Source: Salpingoeca rosetta (lineage: Eukaryota > Protista > Choanoflagellata). From it: 64,000 bases of DNA. The notes beneath the pieces were generated by a model that saw nothing but the letters and a program-made list of their open reading frames with translations, was not told where the DNA came from and did no database searches. The position numbers were made by a program, and so were the translations under genes. The DNA lies in contig JAWQFM010000006.1 of assembly GCA_033442325.1 (NCBI GenBank), positions 957,200-1,021,199 on the forward strand, in the 5' to 3' direction. Shown piece by piece: positions 10,026 through 45,936 of this stretch (position 1 is the stretch's first letter; each line of letters opens with the position of its first letter).

Positions 10026-10173
10026 ATAGGGGCTTCTCTTGTAGTTGAGTGCGTTGTATGTATATCCGTCTTCNNNNNNNNNNNNNNNNNNNNNNNNNNN
10101 NNNNNNNNNNNNNNNNNNNNNNNNNNNNNNNNNNNNNNNNNNNNNNNNNNNNNNNNNNNNNNNNNNNNNNNNN

Positions 10174-38013: not shown

Positions 38014-39553
38014 TCAGTTCTTGCGCGGGATGGCGAGTGCGAGCTGTGTTGGAAGACGGCCCACATTGCCCGAGTAGTGGGTGATGAGGTCTGGCAGGTA
38101 CGGAAAGCGCGGACCCTGGTCAAGCCCAAACGACACGCGCCCGCCACTACCCTGCACCTGCATCGCGTGGTGGACGAGAAGCAAGGGGAGGCAGGCAAAG
38201 GAAGGACGTGGGGCGAGGTTGTTGTGATGAGACAATTGTGGTGAAAGGGAAGCATCGGTGAGGGTGGGGGCCGCGTTTGAAGTGGATACGTGTGACGCGG
38301 AAACGAGAGAAGCGACACAGGACAAGTGGAATATGCTGCACTGACACGTCAACAACATTAACATAACAGTGCCACACAGCAGCAGCAGCAGCCTCGCTCT
38401 TTCTTCCCACCTTCTTGACTTTGTAGTGATGCGGCTTGGACTCGAAGCAGAGCGAAATGACGTAATCGCCAGGATGGCTCGTCGATTCGCGAACAAGATA
38501 CGCCCCTTGCCTGCAGGCACAATGGCGACCCAGTGAAAGGAGCAATGAGTGGGTAAGGGGGCGAACGCTCGCGCGCGTGTGTATGTAGGTATGTGTATGT
38601 ATGTATGTGTATGTATGTGTATGTATGTGTATGTATGTGTATGTATGTGTATGTATGTGTATGTATGTATGTGCGTGCGTGCGTGCGTGCGTGTGTATGT
38701 GTATGTGGGGGGGGGGAGGCTTAAGCGCAAAGGCGGCAAGATCACCATGTCAACTCCATCCTTCACCCCCACCCTCACTCGGCACAACCACCATCACTTA
38801 TGCCAACAAACGCACGCGAAGTTGTAGTCCCTGAGCAGGGCCTCGGCCGCGTCGCGCGAGAGAGCGCCGTGGAACCAGGCGTGCTGCAGCAGCTGCGACG
38901 TGATGGAATCTTTCTCGCCGTTCTTGCCGTCGCCGCTCTTGCTGTCGTCGGCAAAGTCATCAAACTCGACGCCAGTGGCGGCGGAGACGTTTGGCGAATC
39001 CGATGACGCAGCGCGCATGCTTTGCCACTGGTAGTGGTGATGGTGGTGATGGTGGTGGTGTCGCAAGGACTTAGCGGTTTCACAATGCGCAAGCAAACTT
39101 CAGTGCATGCAAAGAGAGACAAAACGCACACAGAGAGATACAGAAACACAGACAGGCACGCATACACACACACACATACATACAGACAGACAGGCACGCA
39201 TACACACACACGCATACACACACACAGACGCGCATACACACTCTCTATTCCTGGCCGACTGCACGGCACACCTTTTGCACGAGCTTCTTGTTCACGTGGC
39301 GGACATCCTGTCGCGTGGGCGCCTTGAACTGCTTGGCCGTGTCAGGGTTGAACTCGCCCAGCTCAGCAAGCTTGTCAAAGCGCTTGCACGTCTCCTCGTA
39401 CCCTTCGCGCAGGTTCGCGCCAAACACGGCAAAGCGGATGCCGGCTAGCCAGATGTTGCGGTCGTCGTCGCTGCTGAACGTCATGGTCGGAATATCCTGC
39501 GGCTCAAACCGCCGCTTGCGGATGTTGGGCTGTGCACACACACACACACACAC

Positions 39554-39614
<61 letters not shown>

Positions 39615-40001
39615 GCACGAGGTGTTATGGCGGTACCGAGATGAGCAAGAAGAATGGGGAGGAGGTGTCACTTCGTGCTGGATAAGAACAATACGAGGGC
39701 AGATGTGCGATAATTTCATGCACGGAAGCGACGACTTACGCGGAAGGCAATGGCAAAGTGTGTCGGCGCCTTGAGTTTGGTGAGGAACGCCGGCAGCGGC
39801 GTGCATACGTAGTGCTCATCAAACTTGACGTACACTTGCAGATCGCGAGAGGCCTGCCAAAGACGAGGACAGGGAGTGACGGAAGGTTGTACCAGAAGGA
39901 TAGGTGGCGTGCTGACGCACATTGTATCATGATGCACGTGGCGCTCGTGGCATGCATCAGATACAAGGGCAACACTGACAGCAATCTTGTATTGTTCGAT
40001 A

Positions 40002-40061
<60 letters not shown>

Positions 40062-40607
40062 CACACCTCTGATTCGCCCTTTGCTGAGAAGTAGACGCCC
40101 GACGCGCGGAGCACGCAGAACCGCTTCTTCCACTTCTTGCCCTCCTTGATCTGCGCAAATCCCTTCACGTCCGGCACGCGCGCCGTGTTGCTGAAGTACT
40201 CCTGCCAGGGTGCGCCAGTGGCGATGATTGTGGCGGTGGTGGTGGTGAGGGTGAGATGCATTCGAATCGCGAGAACACTCTACAACACACACACACATAC
40301 ACACACGCACACACACACACACACAATCAAGCACAGCATGTGCGTGACTGCGGCACCTGGAAGAGTCGGCGTTTTGCATTTCCGGCGAGCTGTGACGTCT
40401 GCGCAGTCGCCTCAATGTCCGCCCGCACAGAGTGGGGGAAGTATTTCTTGGAGAAGAGGGGGAGGAGGGATGGTGGAATGGAAACACCACGTTGAGGTTA
40501 GAAGAGCTTGGAAGACGGTGACAAGTAACACTCCAGAAGCAAGTTGGTATGTACATGCATGCACACCCACACACACACACCCACACACACACCCACCCAC
40601 ACACACC

Positions 40608-40700
<93 letters not shown>

Positions 40701-42094
40701 GGGTGAGGCGATTGAAGGATTGATGTGGGCAGATGTGTGCGAGTGAGCGAGTGCATGAGCAACATCGTCAACCAAACAATCGTCGCGAGTGCACGGCTCA
40801 AGGGAACAGCGCACTAACCTCGGTTCCAAAACTGCAGAGGTCGGCAAGCAGGTCATCAAGATCGGAATCTTGCATGCCTGTCAGCGTCAGCGCGCGCGAG
40901 AGCGTGTGAGAGTGAATCAGTGTGTGCGTGTGTGGTTGTGGTTGTGCGTGAGTGCGTTTGGGCGTTTTGCACTGTTAGCACTTGCACTCGCGTCACACAC
41001 TAACACTACCACCCCCCCCACACACACACACGCACACATGACTTGGTCTCTGCTTACTTGAGAGGACGGCGACGCTGGATGCCATGCCTGTGTCTGCATT
41101 GTGTTCATAATCACCATCATCGATGTGCTTGGTGCTTTGGGCTCCGTCGTGCCCCTGCCCTGTCTCCTCCGCCATGTGCGGGCCATCCAGGTCGCCCAGC
41201 ATGTTTTCGATATCGCCAAGGATGTTGTCCAGCTGATCAATGGTTTCCTCTTTCGTCGACGCAGCCCCCGTGTTCTGTGCCGCGACCGGCTCTGGGTTTG
41301 CTTGCTCTTGCACGTCATCTTCTTCAGATTGAGCCCCGTGCTGCACTTGCTGTTCTCCTTCCTGCTGCTGTTCTTCTTCCTGCTGCTCCTCCTGCACATG
41401 CTGCTGTTCTTCTTGCTGTTGCTGCTGTTGCGTGGGTGTACCGTTGTTCTCGGCTGCAGGTGGCTGCTCAGCGGACAGGGAGTCCGTGCGAGGTTTTGGT
41501 TTCGGCTTTGGTTTTGGTTTTGGCGCGGGCCGAGGTGGGGCCGGTGCAGCCTCTGGGCCGGCCTCTGCTTCGTCTTGCTGCTGCTCGGCGGGTGCTGCTG
41601 TCTGCGGCTGTGAAGGTTCTTGGGGCTGTTCCTGCTGTTCCTGCTGTTCCTGCTGTTCCAGCTGCGCCTGCTGCTGTTCGTCTGTAGCACCCGCTGAAGG
41701 CAGGTGCTTCAGAATGCGGTTGCGGTGGCCCTGGAGTGTGATGCCCATCTCCGTGAGCTTGTCGCTCGTCAGGGCGCCAGCTTTCTCCTGTGACCGAACA
41801 ACGTATTTGATGATGTGCCGTGATTGTCAGAACCGAAACGAGTCTTCTCCTTTGCACACAGCAGAATCATTGGGGAGATGCGTGGGAGCGCACACATAGA
41901 GACAGAGACAAACAGACAACCTCACGCACAAACATGCACACAGAACGTGGACGTGCACACACAGAGACAGACAAGCACACTCACCGACACAAACACACAT
42001 ACACACAGACAGACACATACAAACACATACACATACATACACAAAAAAACACAAACGCACACACAGCACACATACACACACACACGCACAAACA

Positions 42095-42138
<44 letters not shown>

Positions 42139-42268
42139 AACACACACACACACACACGCGCGCGCGCACACAAGCAAATCGCACCAGTGAATCGACGCCA
42201 TGGTCCGCAAACACTTGGATGTACTTGGTGAGCTTGAGCCCCGTCAACCACTCCTCCACATCCGCCAT
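38014..42268 (-). CDS. SAM-PH-SH2 adaptor related to Grb7/10/14 and MRL (RIAM/lamellipodin) families
   Basis: SAM: [36 protein letters not shown]: [47 protein letters not shown]2: [49 protein letters not shown]. Confidence 0.88.
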
Positions 42269-42654
42269 CGCCTCTTCTGTCTTCTTCACTTCTGTGTTGT
42301 TTGTTGTGTTGGTGTGCTGGAAGGCAAAATTGCCTTTGTCTTTCCTGTCCTTGAAGGATTTAGAAACGTCAAAATTGCCTTCACAGCGACAACGACGACA
42401 ACGACACACAAACAAAACAAGAGGAAAGAGCAAGCAAGCAAACAATCCATTCTTCAACCGCCACAGCACCTCACCCTTCTTGACCTTTGCTCCTTCCCTG
42501 GTTTGTTCTGGCATCATCGTGGCTGCCTTGTTCCAGATCCCAGATCCCGCCGCTCCCTTCTTGCCACTGCCCTCCCCCTTCCTTCTGCTCCACAACAAAC
42601 CACAGTTCGTCTCCGTTGTGTCTTCTTGCGCCTTCAAGAGCAATACAAGGTCTC
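42269..42654. promoter_or_regulatory. Putative bidirectional promoter between the adaptor and PDK
   Basis: Head-to-head ATGs are 386 bp apart. The 12-mer CAAAATTGCCTT occurs twice (42325, 42370). Confidence 0.45.

Positions 42655-45936
<3,282 letters not shown>

What the first reader, a model, noticed from the sequence alone, without database searches (positions are those of the whole stretch)
38014..42268. Possible pre-animal hybrid of Grb7-family and MRL-family adaptors with an added SAM domain
Seen: SAM, then short acidic amphipathic helices ([16 protein letters not shown]; [12 protein letters not shown]), then a PH domain, then a C-terminal SH2. Established: Grb7/10/14 are RA-PH-BPS-SH2. 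MRL proteins (RIAM, lamellipodin, MIG-10) are talin-binding helices-RA-PH-polyproline with no SH2. The helices resemble recalled RIAM/Lpd motifs (IDQMFSTLLGEM; DLDALMADL). Inference: the gene may preserve an ancestral state linking phosphotyrosine signalling to talin and actin.
Basis: partly seen in the sequence, partly recalled or inferred. Interest (0 to 1): 0.72.

Follow-up and report, generated by a model that had tools for sequence, protein, structure and literature searches.

The report
Choanoflagellate adaptor joining RIAM-like and Grb7-like halves
This expressed Salpingoeca rosetta gene encodes one protein that pairs the talin-binding-type front end and Ras-association/PH core of RIAM/lamellipodin with a Grb7-type SH2 tail and a SAM domain. 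The same build occurs in other choanoflagellates and in a sponge, so it probably shows what the common ancestor of these two animal adaptor families looked like.

Summary
Window 42268..38014 (minus strand) is one expressed, GT-AG-spliced gene, Salpingoeca rosetta PTSG_11649, annotated only as a hypothetical protein. It encodes a SAM domain, two acidic LD-type helices, a Grb7/MRL-type PH domain and an SH2 domain.

The mRNA carries about 702 further bases (about 234 codons) between exons 3 and 4, and these are absent from the whole assembly. Their two ends, and every orthologue, show that they encode the MRL coiled coil and the RA domain.

The true architecture is SAM, helix 1, LD helix, coiled coil, RA, PH, SH2. 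It is conserved in at least seven other choanoflagellate proteins and in the sponge Oscarella lobularis (named 'Grb14-like').
- The N-terminal motifs and coiled coil match MRL proteins and not Grb7/10/14.
- The SH2 domain matches Grb7/10/14 best.
- The BPS region of the Grb7 family and the Ena/VASP-binding motifs of MRL proteins are both absent.

The RA-PH tree is compatible with one ancestral gene of this build, but it is unrooted. Binding of helix 1 to S. rosetta talin R8 has only weak predicted support. I found no paper describing this family.

The parts
42185..42268 (-). Exon 1: start codon at 42268 and the N-terminal half of the SAM domain. The 5' UTR reaches at least 42317.
   Evidence: Pfam SAM_2/SAM_1 profile positions 8-32. 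Contig X6 record 8 joins 42184-42317 directly to exon 2. Identical to residues 1-28 of P0001.
41058..41787 (-). Exon 2: C-terminal half of SAM, a Gln/Glu/Pro-rich disordered linker, and helix 1 (TBS1-like, [20 protein letters not shown], at 41185-41244).
   Evidence: Pfam SAM profile positions 36-61. RNA depth of 25-76. Helix 1 is conserved in the orthologues and predicted helical in the model of orthologue P0002.
40819..40877 (-). Exon 3: LD-type helix (S)[19 protein letters not shown].
   Evidence: The exon 2/3 junction is seen in 22+19 split reads. The motif [DE]LDxxLx[DE]LC occurs once in every choanoflagellate and full-type protein and in most MRL proteins, and in no Grb7-family protein.
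40447..40818 (-). Apparent intron 3 with a long (GT)n/(GGGT)n tract. This is where about 702 nt of coding exons (coiled coil and RA domain) present in the mRNA are missing from the assembly.
   Evidence: Transcript contigs of 2535 and 2536 nt (X4, X6) hold about 702 nt more than the exons between exon 3 and exon 4. Reads run off at 40818 and 40448 into sequence not in the stretch, and no read joins exon 3 to exon 4. The loose ends read GDKVVERDPV and EKYGIFVNPE. They are absent from the window and the genome. No RA match at this locus or elsewhere.
40357..40446 (-). Exon 4: linker between RA and PH ([30 protein letters not shown]).
   Evidence: The exon 4/5 junction is seen in 91+58 split reads. 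Aligns with the RA-PH linker of the orthologues and of MRL/Grb proteins.
40067..40201 (-). Exon 5 (RNA-defined start at 40201): end of the linker and first PH strands, with the basic [14 protein letters not shown] signature.
   Evidence: The RNA junction is 40201/40357. The eight best PDB matches are lamellipodin, Grb10, Grb14 and RIAM RA-PH at E 5e-06 to 2.5e-05; the next match is at 0.14.
39740..39853 (-). Exon 6: middle of the PH domain (ASRDLQVY...[11 protein letters not shown]).
   Evidence: Loose ends at 39855 continue into the end of exon 5. Identical in P0001. The RDL and KAPT motifs align with all family members.
39272..39529 (-). Exon 7: C-terminal part of the PH domain and a helical extension.
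   Evidence: Contig pieces cover 39272-39525. Pfam PH spans residues 340-438 of P0001.
38816..39027 (-). Exon 8 (RNA-defined start at 39027): conserved motif WQxxRA...[13 protein letters not shown], then the start of SH2 (WFHG...).
   Evidence: The contig continues from 39272 into about 39027. Pfam SH2 positions 1-17. The motif is conserved in choanoflagellates. No BPS match.
38411..38510 (-). Exon 9: SH2 core with the phosphotyrosine-binding Arg of YLVRES.
   Evidence: Pfam SH2 4.9e-10, profile positions 21-53. Junctions on both sides are seen in 44+39 and 60+29 reads.
38014..38157 (-). Exon 10: C-terminal part of SH2 and the stop codon (38014-38016). The 3' UTR continues to at least 37700.
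   Evidence: Junction reads and depth. Identical to the C-terminus of P0001.

Best explanation
The gene is S. rosetta PTSG_11649. Its true product is about 875 residues: SAM, helix 1, LD helix, coiled coil, RA, PH, a conserved SAATGVEF linker, and SH2. The annotated 641-residue protein lacks the coiled coil and RA domain only because their exons are missing from the assembly.

It belongs to an undescribed family found in choanoflagellates and at least one sponge. The family carries in one chain the features that animals later split between MRL adaptors (RIAM, lamellipodin, MIG-10, Pico) and Grb7/10/14 adaptors. The most economical reading is that it descends, with its architecture kept, from the single gene that gave rise to both families. 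On this reading MRL proteins lost SAM and SH2 and gained Ena/VASP-binding proline motifs. Grb7/10/14 lost SAM, the helices and the coiled coil and gained the BPS region.

Inferred mechanism:
- The SH2 domain docks on a tyrosine-phosphorylated protein.
- The RA-PH unit detects Ras/Rap-GTP together with phosphoinositide at the membrane.
- The coiled coil and SAM domain promote self-association.
- The two LD-type helices recruit four-helix-bundle partners such as talin R8 or TLNRD1.

Shown: the gene structure, its expression, the domains, the motif conservation and the family relations. Inferred: the ligands, and the direction of evolutionary change.
For: Gene and expression: GT-AG exons in one frame, stranded RNA coverage and split reads, and identity to NCBI PTSG_11649.

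Missing RA exons:
- Transcript contigs hold about 702 nt more than the exons.
- The ends of that segment translate to GDKVVERDPV and EKYGIFVNPE, which match orthologue P0002.
- The segment is absent from the window and genome by word, protein and profile searches.

Architecture in relatives: Pfam finds SAM, RA, PH and SH2 in P0002, P0005, P0007 and P0014. It finds the same in Oscarella lobularis XP_065839887.1 and in P0067 and P0068.

RA-PH kind: the best PDB sequence matches and the 15 best Foldseek matches (TMt 0.83-0.89) are RIAM, lamellipodin, Grb10 and Grb14.

MRL-like N-terminus:
- hhalign of the choanoflagellate N-terminus against the MRL N-terminus gives 98% probability, E 2.5e-13, on the coiled coil.
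- The same comparison against the Grb7-family N-terminus gives nothing.
- The LD motif and the K.EKIRIA.EK motif are shared with MRL proteins only.

Grb7-like SH2:
- The family profile scores Grb10 at 102.8 and Grb14 at 99.7 bits. The best single domains of ZAP-70 and SYK score 70.5 and 67.8.
- With a choanoflagellate-only profile, Grb14 (85.6 bits) is the first single-SH2 chain.
- In Foldseek, 28 of the 35 matches at ranks 16-50 are Grb7, Grb10 or Grb14 SH2 domains, at 30-35% identity.

Tree: the choanoflagellate clade (100/100), the MRL clade (100/99) and the Grb7 family (split off at 100/98) are separate. Full-type proteins lie on the backbone between them.

Partners exist: S. rosetta has a talin with an R7R8 region. 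TLNRD1 is reported in S. rosetta and binds RIAM TBS1 with Kd 0.25 uM (bioRxiv 10.1101/2020.05.19.103606). Predicted complex of helix 1 with S. rosetta talin R8: score 0.56, best of 3 controls 0.10, rated weak support. That mark was reached by 51 of 78 solved complexes and 2 of 108 mismatched pairs. At 0.60 or under it was reached by only 5 of those 78 and by all 4 passing mismatches. The runs agree in at least 88% of contacts and the partner's pLDDT is at least 64.
Against: - The tree has no outgroup, so the direction of change is argued from taxon distribution and is not shown.
- The backbone branches around the full-type proteins are only moderately supported (89/87 and 93/78).
- The origin of several full-type proteins (P0068, P0122, P0100, P0067) is unknown. 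The animal side therefore rests on one named sponge gene model.
- With the S. rosetta SH2 sequence alone, Grb7 (54.6 bits) does not beat ABL2 (59.0).
- The short helices alone are not significant in profile comparison (E 0.04).
- A RIAM-talin complex has been solved, so the weak complex score may reflect likeness only.
- The S. rosetta coiled coil and RA sequences themselves were not seen, apart from 10 residues at each end.
- Filastereans and ichthyosporeans could not be surveyed.
Confidence: 0.72

Rival explanations
1. Lineage-specific domain shuffling. An MRL-like gene picked up an SH2 domain (and a SAM domain) in the choanoflagellate/sponge stem or in parallel. Under this reading the hybrid is derived, and it says nothing about the ancestor of Grb7/10/14.
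For: Choanoflagellates are known for many unique SH2 combinations: 123 SH2 proteins combined with 53 other domains in M. brevicollis (PMC4342544). The tree is unrooted. The single-sequence SH2 search is ambiguous.
Against: Profile and structural searches place the SH2 domain nearest to Grb7/10/14 SH2, and it sits in the same C-terminal position after RA-PH. The identical order of seven elements is kept in choanoflagellates and in Oscarella. Grb7-family RA-PH domains sit next to the sponge protein in the tree.
Confidence: 0.15
2. It is simply the choanoflagellate orthologue of Grb7/10/14, as NCBI's name for the sponge protein implies. MRL proteins would then stem from an older, separate paralogue that choanoflagellates lost.
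For: The RA-PH-SH2 order and the SH2 affinity. Oscarella lies next to the Grb7 family in the tree, with 89/87 support.
Against: The BPS region is absent even at E 10, while the hemichordate control scores 1.7e-14. The coiled coil and LD motif are shared with MRL proteins and not with the Grb7 family. Choanoflagellate RA-PH domains group weakly with MRL (93/78), and RIAM and lamellipodin outrank Grb10 and Grb14 in Foldseek. No second RA-PH gene of this type is found in the S. rosetta assembly.
Confidence: 0.1
3. Gene-model artefact: two or three neighbouring genes (a SAM gene, a PH gene and an SH2 gene) read as one.
For: None beyond the long repeat-filled introns.
Against: Single transcript contigs of about 2.5 kb run from the 5' UTR and exon 1 to exon 9 in two independent studies. 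Split reads link exon 9 to exon 10. Orthologous transcripts from other species encode the same chain.
Confidence: 0.01

Closest known systems
MRL adaptors (RIAM/APBB1IP, lamellipodin/RAPH1, MIG-10, Pico)
   Same: N-terminal LD-type helices (TBS1-like helix and the DLDxLLxDLC motif). The K.EKIRIA.EK coiled coil directly before RA. A tightly coupled RA-PH unit with the basic PH signature. These are the best structural matches.
   Different: This protein has an N-terminal SAM domain and a C-terminal SH2 domain. It lacks the proline-rich tail with [FLWY]PPPP Ena/VASP and profilin sites.
Grb7/Grb10/Grb14 adaptors
   Same: RA-PH followed by a C-terminal SH2 domain. The SH2 domain is most like Grb7/10/14 SH2 by profile score and by structure.
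   Different: No BPS region. Carries SAM, LD helices and a coiled coil that the Grb7 family lacks. A different conserved linker motif (SAATGVEF) lies between PH and SH2.
Oscarella lobularis XP_065839887.1 ('growth factor receptor-bound protein 14-like')
   Same: The same seven-element order: SAM, helix 1, LD helix, coiled coil, RA, PH, SH2.
   Different: About 36% identity in RA-PH. It has a proline-rich stretch between PH and SH2 and lacks the SAATGVEF motif. It sits nearer the Grb7 family in the tree.
LD-motif ligands of talin R8 and TLNRD1 (RIAM TBS1, lamellipodin, DLC1, paxillin, KANK)
   Same: Acidic amphipathic helices that fit LDxLLxxL. S. rosetta has both a talin R8 region and, by report, TLNRD1.
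   Different: Binding has not been measured. The only test here is a weak-support prediction: score 0.56 against a best control of 0.10.

Membership tests
Grb7/10/14 | RA domain directly before the PH domain | tested here: inconclusive
   Absent from the assembly. The mRNA holds about 702 extra nt at that place, and the ends of that segment match the orthologues' RA flanks. All orthologues have RA. The S. rosetta RA sequence itself was not seen.
Grb7/10/14 | PH domain of the Grb/Mig (GM) type | tested here: met
   The eight best PDB matches are lamellipodin, Grb10, Grb14 and RIAM. Foldseek TMt is 0.83-0.89 for the orthologue.
Grb7/10/14 | BPS region between PH and SH2 | tested here: not met
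   No PF08947 match at E up to 10 in seven family members. The hemichordate Grb14-like control scores 1.7e-14.
Grb7/10/14 | C-terminal SH2 domain of the Grb7 type | tested here: met
   Pfam SH2 9.8e-19. Grb10 and Grb14 are the best single-domain profile matches. Grb7/10/14 SH2 domains dominate the Foldseek SH2 matches. The single-sequence search alone is ambiguous.
MRL (RIAM/lamellipodin/MIG-10/Pico) | N-terminal talin-binding LD-type helices | tested here: inconclusive
   The motifs are present and conserved. Binding to S. rosetta talin R8 is only weakly supported by prediction: 0.56 against a best control of 0.10.
MRL (RIAM/lamellipodin/MIG-10/Pico) | Coiled coil immediately before RA | tested here: met
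   Met in the orthologues: hhalign 98%, E 2.5e-13 against MRL, and motif table. In S. rosetta it lies in the segment missing from the assembly.
MRL (RIAM/lamellipodin/MIG-10/Pico) | RA-PH tandem | tested here: met
   Pfam RA and PH in the orthologues. RIAM and lamellipodin are the top structural matches.
MRL (RIAM/lamellipodin/MIG-10/Pico) | Proline-rich C-terminus with Ena/VASP (EVH1) and profilin sites | tested here: not met
   No [FLWY]PPPP motif and no run of five or more Pro in any of the eight choanoflagellate-clade proteins with a species or EukProt source. Such motifs are present in most MRL proteins sampled.
SAM-domain proteins | SAM fold | tested here: met
   SAM_1 1.4e-12 and SAM_2 1.2e-11. 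pLDDT is about 90 in the orthologue's model.

The most novel reading that the evidence does not exclude
This family is the surviving form of the single ancestral gene of both MRL and Grb7/10/14 adaptors. In choanoflagellates, one protein couples tyrosine-kinase signals (SH2) and Ras/Rap-GTP plus phosphoinositide (RA-PH) to talin or TLNRD1 (LD helices). On this reading a phosphotyrosine-to-talin relay existed before animal integrin adhesion and was later divided between two gene families.
Probability: 0.4. Interest if true: 0.78.

Novelty: new variant of a known kind. Interest (0 to 1): 0.64.

Why it matters
MIG-10 and the Grb7 family have long been known to share an RA-PH core (Manser et al. 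1997, listed in the references of PMC2674303; I did not read that paper). I found no paper that describes a protein linking the two families. This family is such a link. [quoted passage not shown]

That makes three questions directly testable in a transfectable, CRISPR-ready organism:
- How the two adaptor families arose.
- Whether the talin/TLNRD1-LD-motif interaction predates animals.
- How tyrosine-kinase and Rap/Ras signals were wired to the cortex in a unicellular ancestor.

There is also a practical point. The reference S. rosetta assembly and the protein PTSG_11649 lack about 234 codons, including a whole RA domain, and no gap marks the spot. Domain censuses based on this annotation misclassify the gene.

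Tried and rejected
- **First exon model.** Acceptors at 40279 and 39069 gave Thr-rich and His-rich inserts. RNA junctions rejected them.
- **No joined model was searched.** I joined the exons only inside a local script, to check the frame and length, and sent that joined model to no search tool. Exons were searched by reference. Whole-protein work used the database protein P0001.
- **PDB searches with exons 6, 7 and 2 alone** gave nothing useful.
- **The word-indexed protein search** reached only close relatives. With alignments it was swamped by low-complexity words, so the taxon range of the full architecture in animals is undersampled.
- **RA_2 Pfam hits in the genome** are F1 lobes of MyTH4-FERM myosins, not the missing exon.
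- **The weak RA_2 hit at G000:C6:1373736** does not match orthologue P0002 and was not pursued.
- **A second RA-PH gene noted earlier (s1-435946)** was not found by my RA-PH profile at E 0.01. I could not place it in the tree.
- **BPS search:** negative.
- **Profile comparison of the short helices alone:** not significant.
- **The single-sequence SH2 search** did not single out Grb7.
- **The organisms behind P0068, P0122, P0100 and P0067** could not be identified.
- **Papers.** None mention PTSG_11649, or Grb7 together with Monosiga. None of the papers retrieved on MRL or Grb proteins together with choanoflagellates that I opened describes such an architecture.
Full report
**What is there.**
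On the minus strand between 42268 and 38014 lies a ten-exon gene. Its introns are full of CA/GT microsatellites. All exon borders are GT-AG, and the exons give one open frame. Exon-by-exon Pfam scans find three domains:
- a SAM domain split between exons 1 and 2 (contiguous profile positions 8-32 and 36-61);
- the start of a PH domain in exon 5;
- an SH2 domain in exons 8-9.

I joined the exons only in a local script, to check the frame. Later whole-protein work used the database protein P0001.

**Expression and gene model.**
Two stranded RNA-seq runs and two transcript-contig runs, from three studies in all, cover the exons and leave the introns empty. Split reads confirm four junctions in X21 and X22:

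| Junction | Split reads (X21 + X22) |
|---|---|
| exon 10/9 | 60 + 29 |
| exon 9/8 | 44 + 39 |
| exon 5/4 | 91 + 58 |
| exon 3/2 | 22 + 19 |

Transcript contigs of about 2.5 kb run from the 5' UTR to exon 9. The RNA moved two acceptors: exon 5 starts at 40201 and exon 8 at 39027. The corrected model equals NCBI's Salpingoeca rosetta PTSG_11649 (P0001, 641 aa, 'hypothetical protein').

**A missing piece.**
The transcript contigs hold about 702 nt more than the exons between exon 3 and exon 4.
- Reads run off the genome at 40818 and 40448 into other sequence, and no read joins exon 3 directly to exon 4.
- The loose ends translate in frame to ...CSFGTE|GDKVVERDPV and EKYGIFVNPE|KYFPHS.... These match the closest orthologue, P0002, at ...CSFGAENDSVIERQPE and KYGLFVKPEDYFPHS.
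- The sequence is absent from the window and from the whole 55.4-Mb assembly by 17- to 30-mers.
- It is also absent by a search with P0002, which finds every other exon but nothing for its residues 66-343.
- The RA_2 Pfam model and a family RA-PH profile both miss it. The profile matches only its PH half, positions 128-254.
- The only N run in the window is at 10074-10173.

This is therefore an unflagged collapse, most likely across the (GT)n tracts of two introns. The real protein has about 875 residues.

**The family.**
An exhaustive HMMER search with exon 5 returned full-length relatives. Pfam finds SAM, RA, PH and SH2 in P0002, P0005, P0007 and P0014; one search's precomputed domains list SAM, RA and SH2 for P0099, where the PH domain is not called. 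These proteins come from EukProt or ENA transcriptomes and group with S. rosetta and M. brevicollis at 100/100 support.

The M. brevicollis model 31043 (P0003) is the same gene fused to a neighbour. The same architecture occurs in several other proteins:
- Oscarella lobularis XP_065839887.1, which NCBI names 'Grb14-like';
- P0068, encoded without introns on a 994-kb ENA contig;
- P0122, P0067 and P0100, of unknown origin.

The alignment shows seven elements in a fixed order: SAM, helix 1, LD helix, coiled coil, RA, PH, SH2. An AlphaFold model of P0002 predicts helices at all three N-terminal elements. It gives confident SAM, RA-PH and SH2 folds.

**Which half resembles what.**
- *RA-PH.* The best PDB sequence matches of exon 5 are lamellipodin, Grb10, Grb14 and RIAM, and nothing else comes close. 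The 15 best structural matches of the model are the same four proteins, with RIAM and lamellipodin first.
- *N-terminus.* Profile-profile comparison of the choanoflagellate N-terminus with the MRL N-terminus gives 98% probability (E 2.5e-13) on the coiled coil. Comparison with the Grb7-family N-terminus gives nothing.
- *Motifs.* [DE]LDxxLx[DE]LC and K.EKIRIA.EK occur in the choanoflagellate, sponge and MRL proteins, and in none of the Grb7-family proteins sampled.
- *SH2.* A family profile scores Grb10 at 102.8 and Grb14 at 99.7 bits. The best single domains of ZAP-70 and SYK score 70.5 and 67.8. With choanoflagellate sequences only, Grb14 (85.6 bits) is still the first single-SH2 chain. In Foldseek, 28 of the 35 matches at ranks 16-50 are Grb7, Grb10 or Grb14 SH2 domains at 30-35% identity. 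The S. rosetta sequence alone does not discriminate.
- *Family-specific additions.* The BPS region is absent. EVH1-binding proline motifs are absent.

**Evolution.**
The RA-PH tree uses 33 rows and 255 columns under LG+C20. It has three well-supported groups:
- a choanoflagellate clade (100/100);
- an MRL clade of cnidarians and bilaterians (100/99);
- a Grb7 family split from everything else at 100/98.

Oscarella and the other full-type proteins lie on the backbone between these groups, where support is 89/87 and 93/78. The tree has no outgroup. A root on the choanoflagellate branch is allowed and fits the species tree. With that root, the ancestor had the full architecture. MRL proteins then lost SAM and SH2, and the Grb7 family lost SAM, the helices and the coiled coil.

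No second RA-PH gene of this type was found in the S. rosetta assembly.

**Mechanism (inferred).**
- The SH2 domain keeps both phosphotyrosine-binding arginines (invariant).
- The PH domain keeps the basic KKxWKKR..LR signature.
- RIAM and lamellipodin bind talin R8 through their N-terminal LD motifs. TLNRD1, a talin R7R8 paralogue reported in S. rosetta, M. brevicollis and sponges, binds RIAM TBS1 with Kd 0.25 uM (bioRxiv 10.1101/2020.05.19.103606).
- S. rosetta talin has an R7R8 region.

I ran a predicted complex of S. rosetta talin R8 with helix 1. It scored 0.56, against 0.10 for the best of 3 controls, and the verdict was weak support.
- The mark was reached by 51 of 78 solved complexes and 2 of 108 mismatched pairs.
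- At 0.60 or under it was reached by only 5 of those 78 and by all 4 passing mismatches.
- The runs agree in at least 88% of contacts, and the partner's pLDDT is at least 64.
- A like complex has been solved, so this result shows likeness rather than binding.

**Literature.**
No paper in the library mentions PTSG_11649. No paper retrieved, and none that I opened, connects Grb7 or MRL proteins with a choanoflagellate architecture of this kind. Papers outside the library, such as the SH2 censuses of 2008-2011, could not be checked.

**Verdict.**
What remains open is the root of the tree, the taxon range in early animals and other unicellular relatives, and every ligand.

Noticed in passing
window 40447-40818: The reference assembly lacks about 702 nt of coding exons of this gene, and no N gap marks the spot. 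The NCBI model PTSG_11649 joins exon 3 to exon 4 directly, a junction that no RNA read supports.
   Followed up: yes
window 10074-10173: The only run of N in the window (100 bases). It is an ordinary scaffold gap, far from the gene.
   Followed up: no
window 41638: T>C difference in RNA, in 18 of 40 and 14 of 46 reads and in two contig runs. It lies inside the Gln-rich part of exon 2. It could be an allele or cross-mapping of CAG-rich transcripts.
   Followed up: no
window 42376-42700: Plus-strand transcription begins about 100-200 bases upstream of this gene's start, which points to a divergent neighbouring gene. Many reads at 38375-38392, 41399-41430 and 42385-42405 are CAG/GTT-repeat cross-matches from other transcripts.
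   Followed up: no
P0052 (Glandiceps talaboti Grb14-like), residues 1-22: This hemichordate Grb14-like protein begins with FDQMLDNLNEMVADLQ. It resembles helix 1 of the family and might be a remnant, but the profile comparison is not significant (E 0.1).
   Followed up: partly
G000:C2:1035187-1040916 (L017-L020): S. rosetta talin gene with very long exons. R7R8 aligns to human talin-1 residues 1401-1870 within one 629-codon open frame.
   Followed up: partly
L002:2400-2480 (JGI contig encoding P0100): A retained GT-rich intron of about 75 nt separates the proline-rich region from a downstream SH2 open frame. This environmental family therefore also has the full architecture, plus a proline-rich stretch between PH and SH2.
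   Followed up: partly
G000:C2:681931-685215, C3:180676-185739, C17:1036566-1039811 (L010-L013): The Pfam RA_2 model hits the F1 lobes of three MyTH4-FERM myosin-tail genes, two of them with SH3 domains. They are unrelated to this gene.
   Followed up: yes
P0003 (M. brevicollis MONBRDRAFT_31043): The annotated M. brevicollis orthologue looks chimeric. It loses the SH2 domain and continues into a RING-variant, membrane-protein-like tail.
   Followed up: no
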